Below are positions 40,906-56,878 of a stretch of DNA of 64,000 nt, piece after piece. The position numbers and the translations under genes were made by a program. Origin of the DNA: Salpingoeca rosetta (Eukaryota > Protista > Choanoflagellata); assembly GCA_033442325.1 (NCBI GenBank), contig JAWQFM010000002.1, forward strand, positions 2,229,315-2,293,314, in the 5' to 3' direction. The number at the start of each line of letters is the position of its first letter. Position 1 is the stretch's first letter. A model generated the notes under the pieces. It worked only from the letters and a program-made list of their open reading frames with translations. It searched no databases and was not told where the DNA came from.

Positions 40906-41005
40906 NNNNNNNNNNNNNNNNNNNNNNNNNNNNNNNNNNNNNNNNNNNNNNNNNNNNNNNNNNNNNNNNNNNNNNNNNNNNNNNNNNNNNNNNNNNNNNN
41001 NNNNN
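40906..41005. other. Assembly gap (100 N)
   Basis: Run of N characters. Confidence 1.
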
Positions 41006-41152: not shown

Positions 41153-41592
41153 ACAAACAAACAAAACACACACACACACACTGGCTGGCTGCTGGGGTTT
41201 TCTCAGCAAAGTTTCTTCCCCCATTTAACCAATCACCTGCGACAAGACAGAAGACACGCCCATCTGTCGAAAGTTTGCCAATTACAAAGCGGCAAGCGGG
41301 AGCGGCATTGACAGATTATCGTCAACGCGCCATTCACAGCCACGCCCCCTTTACCAACATTTTACCACCTGTCTTTCGGTTGGAGGTACGCCACTGCCTT
41401 TGCACAAAAGCCAAAGCTCGAGCTGTCGAGCTTTGTCAGGTATTGTTGTGGTGTCCCATTCTAGCATTCTGAGCTTTCTGTGCATTGTGTGTCAAATCAT
41501 GTCACATCAACACGTTGCCTTTCATCTTTACTCAAGGACCTAAGGACACAAGGCACATGCAGAACCACAGTGCAGCAGCAGTAGCGGTAAGT

Positions 41593-44305
41593 TTAACACA
41601 CGCCTACACAACAACACAGGCAACCAGGGTGCACTGAACGGCCCGCCAACTGCAGCGCGCACTCGCACAACGCACAACGCAGCGGACGGCCACAAGAACC
41701 CATGACAACAGCGTACACCGCATCGTTCCCGGCGAGCGGCAGCCACTCAAACAGGCAGGCCGTCGCGTTGACGCGCACATGCACCTCATTTAGCGCTGTC
41801 ACCGGTGCAGCCGGCAGCGTCGTCACCAGCGCAGGTGCACTGAACGGTCCGGCCACGGCACTCGTCACACCGTGCACGCTCACGTTGTACGGCGTGGCCG
41901 GGCGAAGGTCACTGCTCGTGTATTCCCTGGCGTTGGTGTTGGTGTTGGTGGTGTTGATATTGCGGGTGTTAGTGTTTGTGTTGCTGGTGGTGTTAGGGTG
42001 TGGTGCCATTGGTGGTGAGTGTGATGATGCGGTTGAGGGGCCGGCGGCCAGGGGTTTCCATGCGCGTCTCCACGATTTGCGCATCATACGCCACGATGCG
42101 GCCGTTGGCGGGGGTCGGGACGCTGATGTTCACCCGCACAGCGCGCTGCCGCACCTCCAGCACCAGCGGAGCGGCGGGTCTGCTCGGCACATCCTCCGCA
42201 GTCACAACACCTGCTGTTGTAAACCCGCTCACCCCGCGACCGTGCACAGCGCGCACACGCACGTCGTAGGCGGTGAACGGAAGCAGGCCCGTGATTGTGG
42301 CGTGCAGCGGTGTTGCCAACTCGTCCATACTCGCGGGCTCGTGATCAAGATAGCGACTGCACATGGGGGAGGGGTGCGTGGGTGTGATTTTGGGGGAAGG
42401 GAGGCGTGTGAGGCCAATAGTAGAGAGAGAGAGAGAGCAAAGATGAAGGAGGCGTACTGTGTGCATGGATCAGGTTTGGTGTGGATGTGTGCAGCAGAAA
42501 TGACGCACAGTGGAAGTGCACACATGATCGTTGAGATTCGAATCGGATATGAACGTGCTCTGACACACACACACACACACACACACACATGCGTATATAC
42601 ATACACACATACACACACAACACACACTCAAACTCACACTCCCCTTCACCACACACACACACACTGAGCCTCTTGTCACATACTCGCCACTGGTTGTGCG
42701 GGAGCGGTGTGCGCGTGTCACCAGGAGGGAACGAGGTATTGGTGCAGGTGACGGGGAGCCACGCGTCCGTGGTGTTGTGAAGGCGAACATCGAGCGTGTA
42801 GTAGTCGATGGGAGCAAAGTTGCCGTGGGGCCGCGTCCACGCAGCGGTGGCACTTGTCGGTGCTGCCGATGTCACGTTGAGTGTGGATGGCGCATCAGGA
42901 TCAACTGCACGTCGCGGCATGTGTGTGTGTGTGTGTGTGTGTGTTGGGTGCGTGTGTGTGTGTGCGTGTGCGGGTGGGGTTACGTGTGAGTGTGTCAATG
43001 TGCGCACGTATCTGTGAAGGGATGTGTGACGCTGGTGCTCGCAAGGACAAACCCCATGAGTAAAGGCGTGTGCATGCGTAGTCTGTCTGAGCAAGCAAGT
43101 ACACGTATCATGTCCTCATGCAGTGCGTGTGTGCGGGCGTGTACGTGTGTGTCGTGTGTCTCATGCGGGTAGGTGTGCCACACCTCGGGTGCAAATGGTG
43201 ATTGGCCCCATTGTATCTGCGATGAGGTGACCAGCCACCCTCTGCGGGGCGGCGCATGCGACAAAGGGGAGGTCTTGTACAATGGAAACCGCGTCCCGGA
43301 ACCACTCCATGCCACAGCAGTACCACGGGTTGTCGCGCAAGTACCTGCAAGGTCGCAAGTAGCCAGCCGTCATCATGTCCACATGCGTGTGAGTATGTGA
43401 GTGGCTGACGAAGCAGACAACGTGGCAATGGCGGAGTGATCCAGGCACGCAAACTGTCGAGGTGCAACGTACAGTTGTGTGAGGTTGGCCCAGCGCGTGT
43501 CGTTGTTGTACACCAGCATCTCCAGCGTGTTGTTGTTCAGTCGCCTGTGTGTGTGTGTGTGGGGGGGGGTGTGTGAGAGTGTGTGTGAGAGGCTATGATA
43601 TGAATGCAGATAGGATGAGCAAGGAAACTTGGTGCAAGGCTGCGTTTGTGGACGTGGATGTGGACGTCGGTGTTTAGGGGGTGTGCACGCACGTGTGCCA
43701 TGTGTGTGTGTGTTCAGTGAGGGGTGCTTTCGTTCTCGTCGTCTTCATGTGCACGTACAGGATGCTGAGTGGATTGTTGCCGATGATGTCAATGGAAAAC
43801 GATGCCAGCCGGTTGTCGGCCAGTCTCCTGTCATTTGTCACGCAGGCGCACGTGTTGTGAAGATGAAGACACGTCAGCACATGCACATGAGTAAGTTTGT
43901 AGCAGAAACGTACACAAAGCGAGTGTGCAGGGGTTAGGAAGGTGTGGGCAAGGAATGACGTCGTGCTGAAATACACGCGCATGTACACACACGCATACAT
44001 GCAGGGGCAAACACACACACACACACACACACATACACACGGGCGCGCGCACACACACCTTTGTTGTGCCATGCGCCACTTGGAAGATTCCTGCCACGTA
44101 GCGCCCGCAAGCGTCTGACGTGACTGTCCGTTTGATGTTGCGGCAAGTATGCACGCCGTGCTGATTGACTGCAAACCGCTGGGATGCATCGTGCTGGTAC
44201 GGCAGAAGTGATGTGTCACCCAAGTGGGAGCGGGACGCTAGTGTTCATGTTCACGGCCCCGTTGCTGCACAGGACATGAATGGCGAAAGTGTCTGAAGCG
44301 TACAC
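41593..44305 (-). pseudogene. Disrupted fragment of an LRR + fibronectin type III cell-surface protein
   Basis: LRR exons RLADNRLASFS and RLNNNTLEML; LRR C-cap YLRDNPWYCCGMEWF; FN3 repeats (PDAPSTLNVTS...AAWTRP...YYTL, ITGLLPFTAYDVRVRA, LRPATPYNVSVHG). Stop/frameshift near 41993, frameshift near 41690, stop at 44216. No signal peptide or TM segment found. Confidence 0.7.
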
Positions 44306-45059
44306 CTGCGAGCATGGAAGAGGAAAGAAGAAAAGGGGGGGGGGGTGAAGGACGAAGAAGGTTGAGTAGGTGGAGCGAGAGAGTAAATGAGAGTGTGTGT
44401 TGTGCTGTGCTGTGTAGTGTAGTGTAGTGTAGTGTAGTGTAGTGTAGTGTAGTGTTGTGTTGTGTTGTGCGCGCGAGAGAGAGAGAGAGAGTGTGTGTGT
44501 GTGTGTCTGTGTGTGCGCGCGTGTGTGTTTTCTTCTTGCTTGCATGCAAGCACGCGCACTGATACGAGGAGTGCATGCAGACGCACGCAGTGAGTATAGA
44601 TACAGACACCAATGCAAACATTGTGGGGTCAGTGGCAATGAAAGAGGCAGAAAACGGAGAGAGAGACTCGTGCACACGCTTGCACACACACACACACACG
44701 TACACAGACGTGTAGAGGCTCACGCTCACACGAACAAGCACAAACACACACGCGCGCCTGCATGCATGTGCCTCACTAACCAGGACGTGTCGTGAAATTC
44801 GTCACTGGCTGGGCAACTCAATACGGTGCTCCGATGTTGGTCGCGAAATAGATGCAAGTCTCGCAGAAGTCAAAACGGTGCTGGACTCAATAATTTTACC
44901 AATCGCCAACAGCGGCAGCAGCTCATGCACTTGCCATGTTTGGCAATGACGCCATGTGAGTGTGGCAACGATCAGTTGGCAGGGTGCACCATCACATTTC
45001 ACGGTGAACAGTACACGCAACACGCATTCCAACACCAACACACTGTTCTGCAATCAACG

Positions 45060-45795
45060 ATGGGTGTACGTGGCTTCTGGTCTCTGTTTGCAGACAGCAC
45101 GGTGAGTGTGCACCTCGCAGAATTCAGCGGAAGCAGGGTGGGGGTGGATGCAATGATATACCTGCACAAAGGGGTCGCGGTCGGACGCGGAATTACGGTC
45201 TGCACAGACCTTGTTGGGCGTTGTTCCAGGTTGAATATTGTGCCCGTCCTTGTCCTCGATGGTCAGGCACCGGTTATCAAGGCACCTGTACAAGCGAAGC
45301 GGCAAAGGGCAGCTTACCAACGAGGGATTGCCAGGCCGAGCCAGCACCAGTTAAAGGAATGGGCCGCCAAAAATGGAATCGGTGAGTCTGCTGGTGATAC
45401 AAACTTGCCTTTGTTATGTTGGTGTTGTACAGCATTCGCACCGCACCAATCCTGTCGAAAACCTTCCCACACGTTTCACGACTCCGTCACTGACGCCACC
45501 ACACCCCTACAAGCAAACGCACAGTACACCCCGCCCTAATGCAGTTCATGCACGCACCCATGTCTTGTGTACGTGCGGCGAAGAGGTGATACAGGCGCCC
45601 GGCGAAGCTGATGCCATGCTTGCCCACCTTCAACTTGAAGGCCAAATTGCAGCCATACTCACTGAGGATAGTGACCTGCTGGTGTACGGCGCAAGGTGAG
45701 AACTGGGCGCACGCATGCACATGTAAACAATAACACACACACTCACTCATACACATACACAAGCAAACGCCCACGCATACATTCATATCCACACG

Positions 45796-45829
<34 letters not shown>

Positions 45830-45930
45830 AGCAAACACCCACGCATACATTCATATCCACACAAACACACACACACACACACAAGCAAACACCCACGCAT
45901 ACATTCATATCCACACGAACACACACACAC

Positions 45931-45981
<51 letters not shown>

Positions 45982-48910
45982 AGCAAACACCCACGCACAC
46001 ACATTCGACCACTCACCCGCGCACTCGCATACACACATACCCAGCAATGTGGTGTCACAAATAAAAGGCAATAGAGGAAGACGCCTCTCTGACGCCTTCG
46101 ATGCTGCAAATTGCAGCAATACTGGCAGGCTGTGACTACACCAAAGGCAGGGACAACGTTGGCTTATTGACAATACTGGCAGGCTGTGACTACACCAAAG
46201 GCAGGGACAACGTTGGCTTATTGACAGCACTTCAAGAACCGTTGGCTCAAGCCAGAGCCCACGCCCACGCCCACGCCCACGCCCATGCCCACGCCCACGC
46301 CCATGCCCACGCCCACGCCCACGCCCACGCCCACGCCCACGCCCACGCCCACGCCCACACCTCCGTAGACGAACCCGAGGTAGACAACAATTCCGAGGCC
46401 GACACCAGTCATCGCGCGCACCTTCGTACGTTTTCCTCCATCGGTCTCGGCGTACCACGCGCGAACGTAATCCAAATCTGCAGGTGCGTGAGTGTAAGCA
46501 TAAGTGTGAGTGTGCTTGTGTGAAAATATGTGTGCATGTGTAATATGTGTGTATGTGCAACAGTGTGCGTGTCGATGTGATGTGCGAGAGTGTGAGAGAG
46601 AGACACGCACCAACTGCCACCTCACATGCACACGCGCGCATCTCTATATGACAGACCATTCAAAGCTTGTTCCACTCACCCTTGCCCGTTTGACGCACGC
46701 CTTGCAGATACGTGGGGGATATGCGCTGGGCGGTGACCGAAGCTATTCGGGATATGTACCTGAAGTGCGCGGAGGAGCACGACATACTTGGTGAGTTACA
46801 GGAGCTCGCACAAACAACGAGGAAACGCTACGTTCAAGCCAAGATCGACTTTCGCAAGACAGGCAAGTGGGACAAGGAAGTCAAAACGCCCACCGAGCCA
46901 GCTACGTTTTCAAGCAAGGTCGTTGAGCTGTCAGCCCACGGCATGGGCAGGGTGTGCACCCGCATGCGCCAGCATGCACGCAACAAGGAGGCTCGCCAAC
47001 CTGACCCACAGGGAATCGAGCGTTTCTTCGGCGACCGAGTGCCAACACGGCCATCATTCATGTCTGCCACTGCGGTAAGCCATATTTGCACACTTGAAGT
47101 TGGCGATGTTCTAAACGTAAATGTACCTCGGTGTCTTGTGCGTATGTGTGTGTGTGTGTGCAAGTGGGTGAGAGTGAATGTGTGTGTGTGTGAATGAATG
47201 TGATGTGAACGGGCGTGAGTGTATGCGCTAAACGTGCATGTGTGTTTGTGCAACAGTGCGCATGTTGATGCAAGAGTGAGAGTGAGAGACATGCACCGAC
47301 TGCTACCCCCGCTTCAGCTTACCAGCCACCACGCGCCACATGTTCTTTTGCTTGCAGGCTCACACTCTTCTCAATCTGCAGTTTCGCCTCATGGAGGGAA
47401 ACTGCCGGCTGTACCTTCGAGTGGCGGCCCGAAAGGCAGCAGCGCGCAGTTCGCGAGCCGGTGGCGGATGTCTTGGTATTGATGATGCCCGGCTTGCTTG
47501 TGTGTCTCTGGCGGAACAGGCGCTGTTCGTCGCCGCTTTGACACACAAGCAAGGTGGTGACACTTCAGCAGTTTTCCCGCGCTTCGCTGCTCGGCACCCA
47601 TTCATCACGATCGACAGTTGTGCATGTCATGCACTGAAGTGCCAAGCCAGCGTGCTGTCCAAGAACGTGCGCAGCATCCGCACAAACGGACACATCGCAT
47701 ACCTGATCCAGAAGAAGGCACCTGCGACCTCCACCGCGACCTCCAGTTCCCGCAGCACTGGCACATCAAAGAAGGCGGGGAAGACTGAGGCAACTGATGT
47801 GAAGCCCGATGTGTGTCGAGTGGTGGGGTTGGACCCTGGTACACGTAAGCCGCTCGTCGCCGTAAGGCTGGGAGACGGAAAGAAGTACACAGTTAGCCAG
47901 GCGCGACTAGTGTCTGAGTGCGGAGTGAAGGCTGGCAGAACTTCAGCTCGTGGTGCCACGTCGACAGATGGTGACGATGGTGACAACGATGGTGACGATG
48001 ACGAGGGTGACGACGTCAATTGTGATGATGATGATGATGGCGCCATCAAAGACAGTAAAGTAGGACACGGCCACCCTGAGGACAGGGGCGGTGATGATGC
48101 AAAAGGTGCTTGTGAGGACGCAAGCTCAGGGGACGACGGGCGCGGGCCTCCGGCTTTGTCCGGTCGGCGGCTGAAGCGCAAGCTTCACACCCGGATGAAG
48201 GCAATCCGACCGTATCAGCAAAGAGCTTTGGCGGCGGCTGGGGCCAAGTCAGATTTTCTTTGGAGCCTGGTGCGTTTCATGCCCCGCTAGCTAGCGACAT
48301 TGTTTGTCTGATGCCTGCGTGGTGGCGCTGTTCTAATGAAGGTTCTGTCGCGGCTTGTTTTGGTCAACGTGTGCAGTGTGCATCGTGGTCGGGGTGGTGG
48401 CGCAAAGTCCAGCACCCTTCGGCTCAGAAGGATGCTGGAAGCTCGCGCCCCTTTGCAGACAGTCGATGAGTTTCGAACCACGCGCTACTCCCTGTGTTGC
48501 GCGTGGCCTCGCGACATTGACGCGTCCAGGCAGTCCCGGTGCAAGTCTTGCGGCGACACCCGCGATCGCGACGCGGCAGCAGCGGTCACCATCGCGTGCA
48601 GGTAATTCTACGCTTCACACTCACTGTGCCTGCTCGCTTGTGGCTGCTTTGTTTGATTCTGACAGCTCGGTGTCTCGCTTTCCCTCTGGGACCATGCTGT
48701 AGAACCCTGACGGCGCAAGCGGGGGGGAACCTGGGCGTGTGGCAGCGGCGTACTTGCTCGCCGCAGATACCAGACCGCCACAATGCCTTGCGTCGCACGC
48801 ATCGTCGTGTGCAGCGCATGTGGTCCGTCCGCATGCGAGCTGCCACCGTCGCCAACCGTCTTCTGAAGCTGAACTCCAGGCTAGGGAAGACCTCACCTCA
48901 CCGGCAGTGA
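45060..48910 (+). CDS. XPG/FEN1/EXO1-family nuclease domain fused to Fanzor1-like (TnpB-related) RuvC nuclease; 7 exons (45060-45381, 45584-45695, 46045-46483, 46708-47074, 47358-48269, 48342-48601, 48703-48910); one frameshift near 46088
   Basis: XPG-N: MGVRGFW...VGVDAMIYLHK...VLVLDGQAP. XPG-I: APGEADAMLA...TEDSDLLVYG. H3TH: ILAGCDY...NVGLLTA. Fanzor part: SIRTNG (47673), VVGLDPG (D at 47832), VDEFRTT (E at 48468), CC...CKSC zinc finger, RDRDAAAAVTI (D at 48570). Splice phases are compatible at all six GT-AG introns. Confidence 0.8.
46117..46224 (+). repeat. Perfect 54-bp tandem duplication (2 copies) of the H3TH motif
   Basis: caatactggcaggctgtgactacaccaaaggcagggacaacgttggcttattga at 46117-46170 and again at 46171-46224; encodes ILAGCDYTKGRDNVGLLT twice. 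Confidence 0.95.
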
Positions 48911-49049
48911 CGCAGTCGTGTACCTTTCTTGCGTGTTAGCATTTGTTTGGGTATCACTGGCCCGCAATGCGATGTACTTGTTGGTGCGCGTGTTATGCAT
49001 ACACATTCCACAAGTCGTCACGAAGAGACAGATACATCGTGTACAAGCA

Positions 49050-52000
49050 AAGCTGGGATGGTGGAGAGCCAAGCGCAAGCGCGATGCTCACGTCCAGGAA
49101 CACGTCCTCATACACGGGCTGGCAGTTGTGGTCGCGGAGGCCGGCGAGCGGGCGCGTGGTTGGGCGTGACAGAGACGCTGTGGTCGTCGACGCAAGGGGA
49201 AACCACACACGCACATCCACGGATGCAGCAACGGCCGTGCCAGACACGCGCACCGTCACAGACACCCGTGATTGGCCCTCAATCTCCGTGCCCAGCAGCA
49301 CCACGGCAGTGCAGTCCGCCGCAACACGCACAACGCTCTGCTTGCCACTCTCACATGCAAGTGCTGTGGTTGACGGCGACACGGGCGCGATGGTGCCTCG
49401 TGCTCCGCCGACCACAGAGCAAGCGCACTTGAAACAGTGTTGCCGTCCAGCCTTGCCGTGTTGATGAGCTCCGCTTGCGCCAAGTGCGGAAGAAGCGCAA
49501 CAAGCGTGTTGGCTGCGACGGGGACATACCCAATGCTCTTGGAGGCGAGCACGCCGCGGTTGCGATGCAGGTGCAGTGCGGGGCTGGGCAGTGGGTAGAA
49601 GCCCTCCAGCTGCAGGTTGCGGCCCTGCAGGTCAACAAAGCCCACCACCGTTGCCTGAAGCTCAGAGAAGCGGCCCTCCACGGCCTGTGGCATCACTGCC
49701 ATCTCAATCGTGCACAGCACCTCGGGGCTGGCGTAGCTGCTGCTGCCACCGCCACCCGACTGCTGCACCTGGCGCTGCAAGCTGATGGCGAGGGTGGTGT
49801 TGCCGCTCGTCGATGTGCGGGCGGACCAGCCAGGCGCCGCAACCACGCGCACGAAGCGAAGCGCGTCAGAGTCAATCATGTCCATGCGCAGCACAACAGC
49901 AGACACACCGCGGTCGGCTTGCGCATACACGGCCAGCTGTGTCGTATCCTCGCGATACACCGGTGCAAACGGCACCAGCACAGCCACGGTGTTGCGCACC
50001 CTCGCTGTAATGGCGGGGCGTGACGCAAGCTGCAGCTGTCCTGGCAGCTCTTGCATGAACGCAGAGGCAGAAAGAGAAGCGCCAATGCCGTACGCGACCG
50101 TGACTGCGCGCATGGCAGCCGGTGTGCCGTCGCTGTTCTCAAGGGGGAACCATGACTGAGGCACACTCGTCCACGTAATGCAGCCTGAAGAAGCGGCGCT
50201 CATCTCACACCACGCCTGTACGCTCACGTCCTTCTTGGTGCCGTCACCATCAGTGTCCACACGTGCGCTCAGCGTGATGCTGACAGTGGTGGCAGCAGTG
50301 CGCATGTTGAAGCTGGCGTCGCGCGCTTGCAGGTGCACCCACACGTGCGGAGCGTCAAACCACACCGTGCTGGCAGACAGCAGCGTCGCCACCACGTCGT
50401 GCGCTGGCTGGCGAGGAACATCAACGTCCTCCTCCGCTTGCAAAGATGCCCACGCAGCGCTCAGCCGCGTCGTCACCGTGTCAGTGGTCGCACTGTCGGT
50501 GATGACCTCTGGGTTGGTGCCTGGCAGCAGCAGGTACGGCTGCGTGAAGGCGACAGAGGACACGCGAACGGGCTGCTGCTGGAACAGCGCTGAGTGCTCG
50601 ACCTGCATCTGTGGCACGGGATACACGCTGGAGATGTTGCAGGTTGGGCCCTCAAACTCCACCGGGCACGCGCACATGTAGTGGCGCGCCTGCGCGTCCT
50701 GCACGCACGTGCCGCCGTTGGCGCAGAACGCATCCGAGCCCTCGTTGCAGTCGCACACGTCGCCGATGCCGTTGCTGTCGCTGTCGCGCTGCTGCGGGTT
50801 GAACACGCGCGGGCAGTTGTCCTTGTCGTCAAACACGCCATCGCCGTCTGTGTCTGCGCGCTCGGCGGGGCAGTCGTCACGAGCCAGCATCACGTCTGGG
50901 AACTCCTCGCTGTCGCTGTTCACTTCCAACGAAGCAATGTTCTCCAGCAGGAACGGGCCAATGAAACACAGGTTCGAGTTGTTGGCAATCACCCACGAGC
51001 CACCGTACGACTGCAGGCTCGCCAGTGCACCCACGTCCAGCAAGACGGTGTTGTCGCGAACGAGGATGTCACCGTCCACGCGCGCAAGGTTGGAAGGTCC
51101 ATCGAGCGTCATCAGGCGCAGGTTGTTGCGAACAATCACATCGCCTGCAATCTGCAGTACTGCAGCCAGGCCGTTGACGCGAAGCAGGAAGTCGTTGTTC
51201 TCCAACACAAATGATCCTTGCAGCCACATGGGCAGGTTCACTGCTTCCAGCGACACGAGACTCGAATGGCGAATAATCACGCTGCCGCACGTGCTGGGCT
51301 CCAGGCCCTGCAAGGTGGAAGGGCCAGCATCGGCCACCACCAGTTTGCCATCGATGGTGGTGAGCGCAGAGAGGCCGGACACGGTGCGCAGCTGTGCGTT
51401 GTTCTCAAGCACGAGGCCGCCAACCCATGTCAGGTTTGCAAGGCCACGCAGAGACACAAGATGGTCGTTGTTGCGCAGCGCAAGCACGCCCGCGACACGC
51501 TGCAGGTTTGAGAGCGAAGCGAGGTGGGCGATGGTGGCGTTTGCTGTATCGTCACCCGTGGCGTTCGCAGGTGCAGCCGTAATGGAGATGGTGACGTTGC
51601 TGTGGAAGACACGACACTCTGCAAGCAAGGCCAGGTCTTCGTATGTGGTCACGGTGGCAGTGGCGCCCGCTTGGTCGAGGAAGCAGTCGCGTGCAAATTC
51701 GCATCTGTCACCCGAGAACCCGGATGGGCATTGGCAATAGAAGCCAGCCACGCGGTCCTCACACAGACCACCGTTGAGGCAGGGCTCAGCCAGGCAGTCG
51801 TCAGCATCAATGCAGGACGCCGTGCTGGAGACCATGCCATTGTCCTGGCACACCTCCGTGAACGTGGTGGGCCCGTCCACGAGTCCGTTGGTCGTGTATC
51901 CTTGCAAGCAGGCCACGCCCACTTGCTCCATGAACGCGAGCTGCTGCGATGCGTCGTCGCCATCAACAAGGCTGCCGTTGACGACCAAGGCCGCGTTGGG

Positions 52001-54055
52001 CGGCGGCACAGCCGTGCACATCACGGGCTCGTCGCACACATCGCCACGGAAGCCGGTGCCTGTGCAGTTGCACGTGTACTCGTTAATGCCGTCCACGCAA
52101 ACGCCGGGGCCGCAGGGCTCCGCCTGCTGTGCGCACTCATCCACGTTGATCTCGCACCGCGCGCCATCGTACCCGGGTGGGCACATGCACTCAAACCCTT
52201 CACCTGGGACGTCGACACAGTCCCGCCGTTGAAGCAGCGCGTTGCGTCGCAGTCAACCTCGTTAATCACGCGCACTGTCAGCGTCTGCGTGAGTGTCAAG
52301 GGCGGGCTCACCGCGGTGTCCTCCACGCGGATGGTGATGTTGTGGGACCGCTGCGTCTCGTAGTCCAGCCGCCGTGACAGCACGAGCGAAGTACCAAACA
52401 CGAAGAAGGGAGGATCGCCAGCAGAAAGCGCCACAAAGCGGTGGAAGCGCGCAGCGTCAGCATCCTCATCCTCAGCCCACACATGTGCAACTGTGCTCCC
52501 GACGGAAGCAAACTCGCTCACAGCGGTCGGGCTCAGCGCGATGCGCGTGGGCGGGTCGTTGGCGTTGGTGACGGTGAGAGTGAAGGTGGTCGTCGTCTCA
52601 CGTTGCGGCACGCCGCTGTCCACACAGCGGATGGTCACAGAGGCCGTTTGCGCCTCCTCAAAGTTGAGCGGCTCAGCTCCCGCACGCAGGACAACCTCGC
52701 TTCCGTTGGCCATGGATGACGACGATGACGCTGAGGAGTCGATGGCAAACTGCGACTGCGGTGACACAACCTCACACGTTGCCGTCTGGTCGGCTTCGTC
52801 CGTCACAAGCACGCGTGCCAGCTGCTCGCCCTCTGGCGTGTTCTCCTGCACCGTGGTTGTGATCAGCGCCAGCGTTGGCGGCTCGTTCACGTCCTCCACC
52901 ACCAGCGTGACGTTGGTCGTCGTTGTCGTCGTTCCGTCAGAGACGCCAAGCGTGTACGTGCGCTTGTTGTCGTTTGTGGACGCGACGAGACCCTCGTAGT
53001 CCTGTGCAGGCAGCGTGAACGTTGCGTTGCACGGCGTGAAGGGGGACGTGCGACCTGCGCAGGGCGTGATCTGCACCGCTGTTGCCTCTGGATCCTCCAC
53101 CAGGAACAAGGTCAGGTCATCGCTCAGGTCCTCATCAACCACACCCACATCCACAGGTACGGGCTGGTTCTCGGGTGCTGTGATGAACGCGTTGTCCTGC
53201 GCTGGTTCCGTAAACACGGGTGCATCGTTGGCGTCCGTGACGCGAATGGGGATGCGCGCCTCAGTCTCCAGTCCCGTTGCATCCACAGCAACCACGCCGA
53301 ACCACTGCACACCGTCAGCGCCACCACTGCTTTCCTCAAAGTTGAGTGGCGCAACAAGCGTAACGTTGCCATCGCTGGTCACAGCCAGCACTGCCGGTAC
53401 ACCAGACCGGAACGTAACTGGACCAGACCCTTCAGGGTCAAGCGCGGAGAGTTGGCCGATCCGTGTCGTTGGCACCGTGTTCTCAACGACGGTGGGCTGT
53501 GTCGGTGTGAGTGTGACGTCCACCGGGGGCTCGTTCACATCCTCCACGGTGATGTTGACCAGCTGCTGCACAAACTGACCAGCAGAGTCGATGGCCACCA
53601 GGTGAAGATGCAGCAAGGGCTCCGTCTCGTAGTCGAACAGCGTCGCCGCATCATCGCGCACGTACAGCAGATTCCCGCGCAGTTGCAGCCGCGTGTCCAT
53701 GCCAACGCCGGCAATCGTGTGCGTGTCGTTGACATCTGGGTCTGCAACGACAAGCTCACCCAACAGCATGCCTGCCGCTGCATCCTCACGCAGCTCGCCA
53801 TCAAACGTGATGCCTGTTGGTGGCTCGTTCACATCGCCAATGCGCACCGTCACGCCCTGTGTGACGTTCAGCCGCTGCGGCGTGGTGTCTGTGCACGTCA
53901 CCACCACCTCCACAGTTGGGCTCGTCTCAAAGTCAAGCACTCCGGCTGCATCACTGCGCAGCACAAGCTCGTTGTTGTCTGTCGTCACGGAGAACAGTGC
54001 ACTGCCAGTGGCCGAGGTGTCAGTTACTGCGCACGAGTGCTGTTGTCCGGTGGTG
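49050..54055 (-). pseudogene. Intronless fragment of a coherin-like cadherin: ~6 cadherin repeats, EGF, sushi-like, receptor L-domain, TSP3, EGF, TMEM132/cohesin region; frameshifted and truncated at both ends
   Basis: Cadherin motifs LDFE/DYE, DVNEPP, DANDAP, A.DPD. EGF motifs CMCPPGYDGARCE, PCLNGGLC. L-domain LRGLANLTWVGGLVLENN. TSP3 DGDGVFDDKDNCP...NPQQRDSD.NGIGDVC. TMEM132-like CEM...GCITWTSVPQSWF, AELINTARLDG, VRVWFP. Frameshifts near 52220 and ~49415. Confidence 0.8.
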
Positions 54056-54058
54056 TCT

Positions 54059-55120
54059 TCACACGCCGTCATCGTCCCCCTCCTCACACTCTTCGCCCTC
54101 TTCTCCATCTTCACCCTCATCCATCCGTTCGTCAACCCAATCAACCTCCTCATCGAGCACGACTGCGGCTGCCTTTTCAACGTCCATCTCGTCAGTGCTA
54201 TCAGCGCTCGCAGCTCGGGTGGTTGTACATGGTGCTGCTTGCTCTACTGCCTCCTCTTCGCCCCTGCCATCGATGATGCGCCGCTGCCGCTCCAGCTGCT
54301 TGTCGATCGAGTCAATAATGGCTTGCACGCGCGTCTTGCCATCTTTGCGGTACTGCCCGCGATCCTCGGCCAGGCGTTGGATTTCTTCCTCCAGACGCCT
54401 TCCAACATCCTCGAAGGTTGTATCGAGGCTGTATCTGCGGCCGACGTTGCCCTGATCAGCGCCCACACGAGCTCGATTGGGTTGAGGTCGCTGTAGCACG
54501 GAGGGGAGAAGAGCACCTTGTGGCCCTTGCGCCTCGGCCAGCTGCACCACCTCGGGTTGGACGTGGTTCTTCACCCACAACTTCAGGCGGTCTTTCAGCT
54601 CGCAGGAGAAGTCAGTCTCGCTCACGGTCAGGTTCCTGGCTCGCAGAGCTGCAATGACGTCCGCTTTCTTCATTCTCCCCGGGACTGACGTGTCTGGTGG
54701 GAGGGTGCAGTGGTACGCTGCGTTGTCCATGATGATGAGCGACGGCTGGTGCAGGTTCGGCAGCAACGCATCCTTGAACCAGCTGATGAAGTTGTCAGAA
54801 TTAAAGGCTTTATGATAGTCCCCTGTATGGAAGCTCCCACGAGGGGGCTTCCGGGGACGGCCCTGCTGTTGCTGTGGTTGCTCAGGAAGGTCTTCGTCAG
54901 CGACGGGGCACTTCTTCCGCGTGTGCCCTGGCTGCTTGCATCGACCACACTTGCGTGTGGATGGTTGCTTCTGTGGTTGTTGAGGCAGGTCTTCTTCAGC
55001 GACGGGGCACTTCTTCCGCGTGTGCCCTGGCTGCTTGCACCGTGGTGGTGGTGGTGATGATGATGGCGGCGGTGGCGGTTGAAGTGACGATGATGGTGGC
55101 GGAGGAGGAGGTGGTGGTGC

Positions 55121-55171
<51 letters not shown>

Positions 55172-55224
55172 GTTGAAGTGACGATGATGGTGGCGGAGGA
55201 GGAGGTGGTGGTGCTTGCTGCTGC

Positions 55225-55269
<45 letters not shown>

Positions 55270-55614
55270 CGTTGTTGTCGCCGCTCACGCTGCAGTGCGC
55301 TGCCAGGGTCGAAGATCCAGCTCGTGCCTGGAACAGGACCGGCGAGGGCGCGGTCGTTGCGGTCACTGACGGTGCACACGCGCGGATCCGGGCCCTGAAC
55401 TGCGAGGGCAAAGCAGTAGCGCCGACCCCGCTTGATCTTGCGATGACTGTGCATGTCTTGACCGTCGTTGGGGTCATACAGGGAGTCTCTGTTCCTGTTG
55501 TAGTTCCTGTCAATGTATGATTCATCGAGATACACCTACAGGCAATTGAGCCACGTGAGACACGAAAAGGGAACATTGCACATGCGAAGAAACATCGACA
55601 ACACAGCAGCATGG

Positions 55615-55652
<38 letters not shown>

Positions 55653-56562
55653 CTCTGAGGCGCTCGTCAGGTGGCAACCTCCTGTTTGCATCAAACTCCT
55701 TCAGATACTTCGCCAGCAGCTGCTTGTGCCTCGGGTTCTCTTGAACAACGTGCTTGTTGCCGCGAAGGTAGCCCGCACGACGAAGAAACCGCTGCACTGC
55801 CCGCAGAGCCGCCGCCCTGTCCAGTTCGTCGTCACCATCGCCAGCAAACGAAGGTCGTACGTCCACATGCCTGTGCTTGCGTAGGAAGTCAAGCACCTGT
55901 ACGGCCGTGATGCGGTGTCCACCTTCTCTCTGCATGCGCACGTGATCGCGAACCTGCCTGAGCACACGTTTTGTCGTGGGCACACGTGTCGGCAGCTGTG
56001 TCGCCTTCCCACGGCGGTTCTCAACAGAAAGTGTCTTAAGGCCCTGCAGACACGAAGCACATGGAATATGAGCCAACATGAACAGATCTAAGACAAACAG
56101 CACGCTGGTGTATGAGTTGACCACAGCAGGTACATCTCCTCAACTCACATCTATGCCGTGCTCTTGCAACAGCTTGTTGAGCATTGCATACTTCCGACGC
56201 ACAGTGCTGAGGCCAACCCTGTGTTGTTCCAGACCGAGGTAAAAGAGTGAAGTGAGGTCGGCCATGCGAATGAATCATGTCACAGTTGACACATGCAAAC
56301 ACGTCAGCTTGCACACTAACAAAAGAGTGTCAACATACCCCAACTGCTTAGCAGCACGTTCATCGACCTGGCCATTCGAGCGCTTGCCCTTGGACTTCCT
56401 CCGGTTCTCCAAGTGTGCCAATTTCAACTGCATGTACACATGCAAAACCAGAAGCGTTTCCTTCTCTGTCAGGGTTCCCTGACCCCTCATGTTCCTCAGG
56501 CACGCACATATCTCCACGATCTCCTGAGGAGTCACGTGCTTCTTGGTTACCGGCTTGGGCAT
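54059..56562 (-). mobile_element. IS630/Tc1-mariner-superfamily DDE transposase with 3 introns, HTH and inserted CCHC zinc knuckles; frameshifted (probably inactive)
   Basis: HTH ERAAKQLG|VGLSTVRRKY. Catalytic motifs VYLDESY, GDYH..FN...F..WF, LIIMDNAAYH, VLFSPPCYSDLNPIELVW. Frame changes near 55150, 54525 and 54455. Confidence 0.88.
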
Positions 56563-56878
56563 GTCTTGTCGTGCCCGCTTTGGTGAGTTGGTGGCAGCTC
56601 GCCTTCATCGTCGTCGCTCACCACCTCGGAATCAGGCACAAACTCATCGTCGGTGATGGTGGTTGAAAATTTTTATTTTGCCGACGATTTGCACGAAAGA
56701 TGCAACTTGACAGCGGTCGCTTGGGGCGTGTGCGTCACCCTTGCACCCCAAACCAGCGCAGATGCATGTGCAAGGCCGACGTGGTGCTGCCGGTCAGCTT
56801 TCAAACGACTCAAATCCAACCACAAACGAGAAAAATAAAACCCTACCATTTCGTGTGTCGGGCACTGTCACGTCAGCA

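What the first reader, a model, noticed from the sequence alone, without database searches (positions are those of the whole stretch)
41180..56870. ~15.7 kb decayed island: transposase, XPG-Fanzor and two fragments of adhesion/surface genes between housekeeping genes
Seen in sequence: all four coding units between MFSD3 and UTP14 carry frameshifts or truncations, unlike the flanking genes. The transposase (-) and Fanzor (+) converge on the cadherin fragment. Established: Fanzor1 genes are carried by eukaryotic DNA transposons, including IS630/Tc1-mariner types. Inference: this is either one large cargo-carrying Mariner-Fanzor element that captured host surface-protein sequence, or a nest of independent insertions. 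The gap at 40906-41005 leaves the left context uncertain.
Basis: partly seen in the sequence, partly recalled or inferred. Interest (0 to 1): 0.8.

Follow-up and report, generated by a model that had tools for sequence, protein, structure and literature searches.

The report
Rearranged cadherin locus hosting Fanzor nuclease
In the choanoflagellate Salpingoeca rosetta this stretch is not one big decayed transposon: it is a host adhesion gene cut at both ends, on one side by the stump of a giant transposon and on the other by an apparently intact RNA-guided nuclease (XPG-Fanzor) gene, and several of the reported frameshifts are reference-assembly errors or introns.

Summary
The genome is Salpingoeca rosetta (GL832958.1). 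The four coding units exist at the stated places, but "all decayed" is only partly right.

- **Frameshifts:** the cadherin frameshift at 52221 and two transposase frameshifts (54452, 54524) are contradicted by contigs of four public read sets. The Fanzor frame changes I checked are canonical introns, and the gene is annotated (501 aa).
- **Real damage:**
  - The DDE_3 transposon copy (54061-56863) lacks both ends.
  - The cadherin/EGF/TMEM132-module gene starts inside a cadherin repeat exactly at that junction.
  - The same gene has a genuine 1-nt frameshift at 49403 and stops being TMEM132-like near 49061, beside the Fanzor 3' end.
- **Not one element:** transposon homology ends sharply at 54061 and 56863, the right terminal repeat is absent, and the local XPG-Fanzor is a different lineage in the opposite orientation.
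- **Elsewhere in the genome:** the same transposase family heads a ~17.7-kb repeat (at least 5 copies) that carries a UTP20-like gene plus the XPG-Fanzor SAl-2. The proposed Mariner-Fanzor link therefore exists, just not here.
- **Second form:** all four read sets also hold a form joining 43119 to 50044. It lacks 6,924 bp, including the whole XPG-Fanzor.

The scan has noted XPG-Fanzor pairs before on other pieces of this genome.

The parts
40906..41005 (.). Assembly gap of 100 N between the MFS transporter gene and the fn3 exons.
   Evidence: The same gap appears in L007.
41593..43094 (-). Exons for about 2.5 fibronectin type III domains. One frame change lies near 41997 in a C3 run. The third domain is incomplete and no transmembrane segment follows. 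The annotation puts part of this into a 479-aa model (41993-46412) that runs antisense to the XPG exons.
   Evidence: Pfam fn3 E 4e-7, 1e-4 and 2e-3. Frames. Gene calls.
43120..50043 (.). 6,924-bp segment that is missing in a second DNA form (43119 joined to 50044). GCAG stands at both borders (43120-43123 and 50044-50047). The segment holds the whole XPG-Fanzor and the last ~262 codons of the cadherin/TMEM132 ORF.
   Evidence: Loose ends at 50044 in all four runs match window 43090-43119 with 1 mismatch. Border sequences.
45069..46484 (+). XPG/FEN1/EXO1-type nuclease exons. They comprise XPG_N in one exon, an intron 45382-45583 (GTGAGT..AG), the first part of XPG_I, a CA-repeat intron, and an H3TH-like exon. 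The XPG_I-to-H3TH joint has no clean in-phase GT..AG solution that keeps the conserved residues.
   Evidence: Pfam hits. Colinear with the annotated XPG gene of L005. Splice candidates.
46117..46224 (+). Perfect 54-bp tandem duplication, in frame (18 aa, ILAGCDYTKGRDNVGLLT twice), inside the H3TH-like exon.
   Evidence: Repeat family D20. Not covered by the reads I laid.
46707..48910 (+). Fanzor (TnpB-like RuvC nuclease) part, annotated as a 501-aa gene at 46721-48910. The motifs are RuvC-I VVGLDPGTR, then EFRTT, a CC..CxxC zinc finger, and RDRD. A 72-nt intron lies at 48270-48341 (GTGCGT..AG), and a donor GTAATT lies at about 48600-48601. An acceptor at 46707 would join it in frame to the XPG exons.
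   Evidence: PF07282 E 1.3e-6. 56.6% identity over 76 aa to SAl-2 protein P0168. Introns. Gene call.
48911..49061 (.). Stretch between the annotated Fanzor stop and a breakpoint (49061|49062) seen in run X15 only. Beyond the breakpoint a variant contig continues the TMEM132 reading frame with other sequence. This is the candidate right border of the Fanzor unit.
   Evidence: Loose end at 49062. The sequence is absent from the window and the fetched loci. Sibling notes place omegaRNA candidates at 48750-49056; I did not test them.
49062..54060 (-). Adhesion-gene body with 6 cadherin repeats (the first cut short), EGF, receptor-L domain, TSP3, EGF, TMEM132-type cohesin-like domain and Ig_TMEM132_4th. 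No signal peptide, no 5th or 6th Ig domain, no transmembrane segment. Annotated as part of a 2,239-aa model that I infer (from product length only) also swallows the transposase.
   Evidence: Pfam hits. Gene call. Long contigs of 3.1-3.9 kb in four runs. 24 of 33 differences are synonymous in the ORF-B frame (P = 4e-7); one more becomes synonymous in the corrected frame.
49403..49403 (-). Genuine 1-nt frameshift inside the Ig_TMEM132_4th domain. Run X15 has an extra A here that keeps the frame open to 48996.
   Evidence: Profile positions 2-35 lie in one frame and 36-96 in the other.
52221..52224 (-). Reference error. The reference has CCC where all four read sets have CCCC. Corrected, the EGF domain reads NGGDCVDVPGEGFECMCPPGYDGARC.
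54061..56863 (-). Stump of a DDE_3 (IS630/Tc1-mariner superfamily) transposon. It is 91-98% identical to copies L001, L002, L004 and L008, and colinear with intact transposase P0108 to residue ~607 of 664. It lacks the first 9 nt (CATCATCGC) of the element and everything after the junction. The junction itself creates the stop codon.
   Evidence: Contigs reach k-1 letters across 54061 in all four runs.
54452..54524 (-). Two reference indels (+T behind 54452, one letter too many at 54524) that scramble the HKVLFSPPCYSDLNPIELVWALIK motif of the transposase. No read-set contig shows the reference state.
   Evidence: Caveat: these contigs may come from the other copies.

Best explanation
The island is a mosaic made by several separate events around one host gene. 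It is not a single mobile element.

**Step 1, host gene (inferred).** A large cadherin gene with EGF domains and the ancient TMEM132 module lay on the minus strand between UTP14 and the MFS transporter gene. The fn3 exons were probably its downstream part.

**Step 2, XPG-Fanzor.** A third-lineage XPG-Fanzor2 gene, distantly related to SAl-2, sits antisense in the 3' part of that gene. The TMEM132 module breaks off after its fourth domain at about 49061. This is shown by domain mapping. The exact border rests on one read set.

**Step 3, transposon stump.** A copy of a ~17.7-kb DDE_3 composite transposon landed next to UTP14. Elsewhere that composite carries a UTP20-like gene and its own XPG-Fanzor (SAl-2). 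A later deletion removed about 15 kb of it together with the 5' end of the cadherin gene. What remains is the 2.8-kb stump fused to the middle of a cadherin repeat at 54060|54061. The truncation and the junction are shown. The order of events is inferred.

**Step 4, second form.** A second form of the locus exists in every read set. In it a 6,924-bp deletion with GCAG microhomology removed the XPG-Fanzor and the cohesin/Ig4 coding part. It is most likely a second genomic copy missing from the assembly (inferred).

**State of the genes.** The XPG-Fanzor itself looks like a live, intron-bearing gene rather than a wreck. Much of the apparent decay is reference indel error plus introns.
For: **Organism and transposon**
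- Organism and paralogues.
- Transposon homology limits and truncation.
- No right terminal repeat in the window.
- No cadherin or fn3 in other copies.

**Read evidence**
- +C at 52221, +T at 54452 and -1 at 54524 in 4 of 4 runs.
- Contigs cross 54061 by k-1 letters in 4 of 4 runs.
- The junction 43119|50044 is present in 4 of 4 runs.

**Domain order**
- The order conserved region, cohesin-like, Ig 4th matches the fixed TMEM132 order reported for choanoflagellate cadherins (PMC6030884). The reference form is therefore ancestral at 50044, and the short form is a deletion.

**Fanzor integrity**
-, and the annotation.

**Composite elsewhere**
- Colinear blocks, three coinciding left ends and four coinciding right ends with different flanks.
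- Neighbouring locus tags PTSG_04010/04012, 11539/11538 and 12555/12556.

**Constraint**
- Synonymous bias of the differences, 24 of 33 against 29.5% expected, P = 4e-7. One more is synonymous in the corrected frame.
Against: - All read evidence comes from Logan contigs (k = 31 unitigs with popped bubbles), not raw or long reads. Copy number, phasing and the run kinds (DNA or RNA) are guesses.
- The 49061 border is seen in one run only, and its other flank was not found.
- A stump of a Fanzor-carrying transposon lying 5 kb from an unrelated XPG-Fanzor is unlikely by chance (rough estimate well under 1%). "Independent events" does not explain that.
- The strong synonymous bias in a gene lacking both ends is odd. 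Gene conversion from intact paralogues, or two diverging copies, could explain it, but neither was shown.
- The XPG_I-to-H3TH exon joint has no clean splice solution, and the H3TH exon carries an 18-aa duplication. The XPG half may be impaired.
- I obtained no RNA evidence of expression.
Confidence: 0.75

Rival explanations
1. One large cargo-carrying Mariner/IS630-type element spans about 41.2-56.9 kb. It carries the XPG-Fanzor and captured host surface-protein sequence.
For: - The same transposase family does carry an XPG-Fanzor plus a host-like gene (UTP20-like) in ~17.7-kb units elsewhere.
- The transposase and a Fanzor lie within 5 kb of each other here.
Against: - Homology to the other copies ends at 54061 and 56863.
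- The window copy is cut at both ends.
- There is no right terminal repeat in the window.
- The cadherin and fn3 pieces are absent from the other copies.
- The local Fanzor is another lineage and is inverted relative to the composite layout.
- The cadherin domain order continues across 50044 as in normal host genes.
Confidence: 0.04
2. The 6.9-kb segment 43120-50043, or a shorter unit ending at 49061, is itself a mobile XPG-Fanzor unit. It is present in some genome copies or cells and absent in others. The short form would be an empty or excised site, and the closeness of the DDE_3 stump would reflect Fanzor-linked targeting or repair.
For: - Both forms occur in all four read sets. The long-form-specific depth is about one half of the shared part in X1 and X15 and about one quarter in X17.
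- A 4-nt repeat, GCAG, stands at both borders.
- The X15 breakpoint at 49061 lies 151 nt after the Fanzor stop. That is where a transposon right end and guide RNA would be expected from TnpB/Fanzor biology (established knowledge; sibling notes).
Against: - The segment contains 262 codons that continue the host gene in frame and in the canonical TMEM132 domain order. They show synonymous-biased variation. That fits a deletion, not an insertion.
- I saw no terminal repeats at the borders.
- No second copy of this Fanzor lineage was found. The big protein search gave only SAl-2 relatives at E about 1e-7.
Confidence: 0.12
3. The reference arrangement is partly a misassembly. Two near-identical loci were collapsed, so the apparent neighbourhood (stump, cadherin, Fanzor, fn3) never exists on one molecule.
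For: - Two structural forms are present and depth steps occur at 50044.
- The reference has many indel errors in 6 kb.
- An assembly gap lies at 40906-41005, and large gaps follow every other transposon copy.
Against: - Each individual junction of the reference form (43119|43120 inferred from branching, 50043|50044, 54060|54061) is backed by contigs in several independent runs.
- Contigs of 2.8-3.9 kb cover 47280-50073 and 50234-54089 without a break.
Confidence: 0.09

Closest known systems
Fanzor2 family SAl-2 of Salpingoeca sp. ATCC 50818 (Bao & Jurka 2013, PMC3627910; proteins PTSG_12014, PTSG_04012)
   Same: - Same organism.
- Same TnpB-type motif set: D ... TT ... C4 zinc finger ... RD.
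- Colinear N-terminal blocks: LAQTTRK, FP.F...HPFI, SIRT.G..AYL, VVG.DPGTR.
- An XPG-type nuclease lies directly upstream on the same strand.
   Different: - Only about 30% identity in the N-terminal half and 57-61% in the C-terminal 50-76 residues, so it is a separate lineage.
- I found a single copy only.
- It lacks the CCHC knuckle of SAl-2.
- It is not inside the DDE_3 composite. It sits in a host cadherin gene.
Fanzor-bearing Mariner/Tc1 transposons (Bao & Jurka 2013; Jiang et al. 2023, PMC10530073)
   Same: Elsewhere in this genome, a DDE_3 transposase and a Fanzor lie in one repeat unit with imperfect terminal inverted repeats of about 28 nt.
   Different: - In the window only a stump without ends is left.
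- The composite is far larger (about 17.7 kb against 2-5 kb).
- It carries a Fanzor2-type protein with an XPG nuclease and a UTP20-like gene.
- It shows no TA duplication. Published Mariner/Tc1 links are mainly Fanzor1.
Choanoflagellate cadherins with the TMEM132 module (coherin, lefftyrin and hedgling families: Nichols et al. 2012; Sanchez-Pulido & Ponting 2017, PMC6030884)
   Same: Cadherin repeats and EGF, followed by the conserved region, the cohesin-like domain and an Ig domain in the canonical order.
   Different: - Truncated at both ends: no signal peptide, only one of the three Ig domains, no transmembrane segment.
- The fn3 exons are separated from it by the XPG-Fanzor.
SrosTm, the Tc1/mariner family described in S. 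rosetta (Southworth et al. 2019, PMC6875170)
   Same: - Same superfamily.
- 28-nt terminal repeats.
- No identifiable target duplication.
- Relatives in stramenopiles. My search also found diatom DDE_3 proteins.
   Different: SrosTm is 2,071 bp, intronless and single-gene. The family here has an intron-bearing ~3-kb transposase gene with a CCHC knuckle and heads a ~17.7-kb unit. I did not test whether the two are related.

Membership tests
Fanzor / TnpB RNA-guided RuvC nucleases | Motif D-X(125-275)-[TS][TS]-X-X-C4 zinc finger-X(5-50)-RD (Bao & Jurka 2013). | tested here: met
   VVGLDPGTR, then about 194 residues after removing the 72-nt intron, then EFRTTRYSLCCAWP..CKSCG..RDRD. PF07282 E 1.3e-6.
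Fanzor / TnpB RNA-guided RuvC nucleases | Sequence kinship to an accepted Fanzor. | tested here: met
   The only two hits among 1.84 billion representatives are SAl-2 proteins P0168 and P0169. tblastn gives 56.6% identity over 76 aa, E 1e-19.
Fanzor / TnpB RNA-guided RuvC nucleases | Guide (omega) RNA encoded at the 3' end and a defined transposon right end. | not tested
   Only a lead: a breakpoint at 49061 in one read set and sibling notes.
XPG/FEN1/EXO1 5' nucleases | XPG_N and XPG_I catalytic regions plus an H3TH motif. | tested here: inconclusive
   XPG_N is complete (profile 1-97 of 101, E 3e-9). XPG_I covers only profile 3-39 of 89 (E 6e-12). The H3TH-like ILAGCDY is present but duplicated. 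No clean splice joins XPG_I to H3TH.
Tc1/mariner/IS630 transposon (the copy in the window) | DDE_3 transposase. | tested here: met
   88-94% identical to P0108, which hits PF13358 at E 6e-10.
Tc1/mariner/IS630 transposon (the copy in the window) | Terminal inverted repeats at both ends. | tested here: not met
   The left end lacks 9 nt. The right end is missing, and no match to the right repeat occurs in the window.
Tc1/mariner/IS630 transposon (the copy in the window) | TA target-site duplication. | tested here: not met
   No TA at 56864 or 54060. The two full copies with both flanks known show no consistent duplication either.
Single composite cargo transposon spanning 41180-56870 | The same content and the same ends in other genomic copies. 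| tested here: not met
   Other copies share only 54061-56863 with the window.
Cadherins with a TMEM132 module (coherin/lefftyrin/hedgling type) | Cadherin repeats followed by the five TMEM132 domains in fixed order, then a membrane anchor. | tested here: not met
   Cadherin E 6e-23. TMEM132_3rd is weak (E 0.035-0.1) and Ig_TMEM132_4th scores E 1e-10. The 5th and 6th domains and the membrane anchor are absent from the window. It is a fragment of such a gene, not a complete member.

The most novel reading that the evidence does not exclude
Two linked ideas remain open.
- XPG-Fanzor units in S. rosetta may still be mobile or may still provoke rearrangement. The 6.9-kb Fanzor-bearing segment is present in one form of this locus and precisely absent in another in every public read set. 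A possible Fanzor-free border also shows at 49061.
- The ~17.7-kb DDE_3 element may be a previously undescribed giant Tc1/mariner-type transposon that uses an XPG-Fanzor2 pair as cargo. Its stump beside a resident XPG-Fanzor would then reflect nuclease-linked targeting or repair rather than chance.
Probability: 0.15. Interest if true: 0.8.

Novelty: new variant of a known kind. Interest (0 to 1): 0.55.

Why it matters
**For annotation.** Three of the frameshifts in this locus are assembly errors. The public gene models look wrong: a 2,239-aa product that I infer fuses transposase and cadherin, and a 479-aa gene antisense to the XPG exons.

**For Fanzor biology.**
- S. rosetta is a genetically tractable close relative of animals, and all its Fanzor lineages seem to be paired with an XPG/EXO1-type nuclease.
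- One lineage rides in a ~17.7-kb DDE_3 element. The S. rosetta transposon survey (PMC6875170) and the Fanzor papers I could read do not describe it. Those papers tie Fanzor2 to IS607, Helitron and hAT, not to Mariner/Tc1.
- The two co-existing forms of this locus, with and without the Fanzor, give a concrete and PCR-testable handle on whether such units move or get deleted.

Tried and rejected
- **Terminal repeats of the island.** The inverted and direct repeat search of 40.5-57.5 kb returned only microsatellites.
- **Cadherin ORF word search.** It was swamped by EGF proteins. It found no S. rosetta paralogue and no self hit, because the annotated product (2,239 aa) lies outside the length window.
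- **Big protein search with the Fanzor RuvC-I piece.** Only two weak hits, both SAl-2. No close paralogue of this lineage turned up, and oddly not the window's own 501-aa model either.
- **First linkage test.** It seemed to show that the transposase copies have no Fanzor nearby. I rejected that result after finding that each copy is followed by 7-9 kb of N. Cluster members and further loci reversed it.
- **Junction 43119|50044 as an intron.** Rejected. No GT..AG or GC..AG fits at any of the five possible cut positions, and at least two of the runs look like DNA (contigs over 150 kb).
- **Brute-force exon enumeration for the 501-aa model.** It timed out. I checked the junctions one by one instead.
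- **TA or other target duplications of the composite.** None was consistent.
- **Not done: RNA evidence.** All runs are contigs of uncertain kind.

Full report
**Identity and layout**

The window is Salpingoeca rosetta, scaffold GL832958.1 of GCA_000188695.1. The MFS transporter protein P0170 maps back to the window at 100% identity (L007). The transposase paralogues are PTSG_ proteins.

From left to right the region holds:
- MFS/Acatn transporter exons on the minus strand.
- A 100-N gap at 40906-41005.
- fn3 exons on the minus strand, 41593-43094.
- XPG_N, XPG_I and a TnpB/Fanzor nuclease on the plus strand, 45069-48910.
- A long cadherin/EGF/receptor-L/TSP3 ORF on the minus strand, 49256-54180.
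- A DDE_3 transposase on the minus strand, up to 56863.
- Utp14 on the plus strand.

**How decayed is it?**

I laid contigs of four public runs from four studies on 48650-54640 (5,991 letters).
- All four put a C behind 52221. That is exactly the missing base I had inferred inside an EGF domain (CCC becomes CCCC). The "two cadherin ORFs" are one ORF of about 1,640 codons.
- All four also contradict the two indels (54452, 54524) that scramble the transposase motif HKVLFSPPCYSDLNPIELVWALIK. Those contigs may stem from other copies, but no contig shows the reference state.
- The Fanzor frame changes I checked are canonical introns. One is 48270-48341 (GTGCGT..AG, the only solution). Another is the donor GTAATT just before 48602. 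XPG_N joins XPG_I through 45382-45583 (GTGAGT..AG).
- The public annotation calls a 501-aa Fanzor gene at 46721-48910.

Real defects remain.
- **Frameshift at 49403.** It is shared by the reference and three of four runs. It splits Ig_TMEM132_4th between profile positions 35 and 36.
- **XPG_I to H3TH.** This joint has no clean splice solution, and the H3TH exon has a perfect 54-bp duplication.
- **fn3.** The fn3 frame change near 41997 sits in a C3 run and could not be tested.

**The transposon is a stump**

blastn against four paralogous loci shows 91-98% identity over exactly 54061-56863 and nothing else.
- The other copies start 9 nt earlier (CATCATCGC).
- They run on past the window's junction, first through the last ~57 codons of the transposase.
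- The junction 54060|54061 creates the stop codon and falls about 20 residues into a cadherin repeat.
- In all four runs the unique-side contig ends k-1 letters inside the repeat, and no other branch occurs at 54060. The junction is therefore real at the k-mer level.

**Linkage of transposase and Fanzor elsewhere**

My first test found no Fanzor within 10 kb of the other transposase copies. It was void, because each copy is followed by 7-9 kb of N. Further evidence reversed it.
- The SAl-2 Fanzor loci L005 and L006 turned out to be colinear with the sequence downstream of the transposase.
- Cluster members gave neighbouring locus tags: transposase PTSG_04010 with Fanzor 04012, 11539 with 11538, and 12555 with 12556.
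- Locus L008 shows the whole unit on one scaffold: the transposase (+), two UTP20-like gene calls (-), and an XPG plus Fanzor stretch (+).
- Three left ends (L001, L002, L004) and four right ends (L005, L006, L008, L009) coincide to the base and have different flanks.
- The ends form an imperfect inverted repeat of about 28-30 nt.
- The unit is about 17.7 kb, with at least five copies at 90-99.7% identity. One copy holds a Copia-type insertion.
- I found no target duplication.

The S. rosetta transposon survey describes only a 2,071-bp, single-gene Tc1/mariner family, also without target duplications (PMC6875170). Bao & Jurka listed SAl-2 with only its right end defined.

**Why the window is not such a unit**

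- The window has only the first 2.8 kb of the composite.
- Its right terminal repeat is absent.
- Its own XPG-Fanzor shares just ~30% (N-terminal half) to 57-61% (C-terminal part) protein identity with SAl-2.
- That XPG-Fanzor is inverted relative to the composite layout.

The XPG-Fanzor pairing itself is conserved. The window and L005 are colinear from the XPG start through the nuclease. The L005 XPG model includes the block that forms the N-terminus of the Fanzor models in the window and in L006. An acceptor at 46707 allows an in-frame fusion.

**The host gene**

- Downstream of the second EGF block, the ORF shows a weak TMEM132 cohesin-like domain and then Ig_TMEM132_4th.
- That is the fixed order known from choanoflagellate cadherins (PMC6030884).
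- The module breaks off after the fourth domain. There is no 5th or 6th Ig domain and no membrane anchor.
- From memory of Nichols et al. 2012, lefftyrin-type cadherins continue with FN3 repeats. The fn3 exons may therefore be the severed tail of the same gene. This is inference, not tested.
- Differences between the reference and the read-set contigs are clustered and strongly synonymous: 24 of 33 against 29.5% expected, P = 4e-7, with one more synonymous in the corrected frame. That points to constraint, to conversion from intact paralogues, or to two diverging copies.

**A second form of the locus**

- In all four runs a contig joins 43119 directly to 50044. The loose end equals window 43090-43119 with one mismatch, and GCAG stands at both borders.
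- No splice-site pair fits, and at least two runs look like DNA.
- This form lacks 6,924 bp: the entire XPG-Fanzor and the cohesin/Ig4 coding part.
- The reference form keeps the canonical domain order across 50044. I therefore read the short form as a microhomology-mediated deletion.
- Contig depth of the long-form-specific part is about half that of the shared part in X1 and X15, and about a quarter in X17. That suggests two genomic copies, one of them missing from the assembly. A mixed culture cannot be excluded.
- Run X15 alone has a contig that leaves the window at 49061|49062 while keeping the TMEM132 frame open. This is a possible Fanzor-free border, 151 nt after the Fanzor stop.

**Verdict**

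- The single-element reading is rejected for this locus.
- The "nest" reading is supported.
- The Mariner-Fanzor link is real elsewhere in the genome and is apparently undescribed in that form.

- Read laying was given under 6,000 letters.
- No toxin or virus material was involved.

Noticed in passing
L008:1-15711 (GL832970.1); also L001+L006 (GL832963.1), L002+L009 (GL832955.1), L004, L005: A repeat unit of about 17.7 kb with at least 5 copies. In order it holds a DDE_3/CCHC transposase gene, UTP20-like gene calls on the other strand, an XPG-type nuclease and the SAl-2 Fanzor. Left ends (CATCATCGCGCCCGACAC...) and right ends (...GTGTCGCCCGCGGTCA) coincide to the base. The terminal inverted repeat is imperfect, about 28 nt. 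No target duplication was found.
   Followed up: partly
L009:10001-18009: Gene model PTSG_11538 (1,523 aa) fuses a Copia-type polyprotein (rve, RVT_2) with SAl-2 Fanzor sequence. This is a retrotransposon inserted into one composite copy.
   Followed up: no
window 46117-46224: Perfect 54-bp tandem duplication inside the H3TH-like exon of the XPG part. It may be a recent event or an assembly artefact. It was not covered by the reads I laid.
   Followed up: no
window 49104, 49759, 52221, 54452, 54524: Reference indels contradicted by read-set contigs: +TCC at 49104 (3 of 4 runs), +CTG at 49759 (4 of 4), +C at 52221 (4 of 4), +T at 54452 (4 of 4) and -1 at 54524 (4 of 4). That is about one per 1.2 kb, so frameshifts read from this assembly need checking.
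   Followed up: yes
window 41993-46412 (-) and 48993-~56600 (-): Public gene models look wrong. A 479-aa model runs antisense through the XPG exons into fn3 exons. A 2,239-aa model appears, by length only, to fuse the transposase stump with the cadherin ORF.
   Followed up: partly
window 46694-46725 and L005:9521-9545: The residues just upstream of the annotated Fanzor start codon are conserved between lineages (RYVGDM against RYAGQM). They are preceded by an acceptor site. This supports one XPG-Fanzor reading frame rather than two genes.
   Followed up: partly
window 54867-55042: The CCHC zinc-knuckle segment of the transposase (CKQPGHTRKKCPVA) is duplicated (77 nt, 91% identity). It is flanked by long poly-N, poly-Q and poly-P coding repeats that are absent from paralogue P0108.
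   Followed up: no
window 50147-50263, 51095-51131, 51215-51395, 49796-49838: Differences between the read sets and the reference come in short clusters, and the clusters differ from run to run. This fits two near-identical copies whose bubbles were resolved differently, or gene-conversion tracts.
   Followed up: partly
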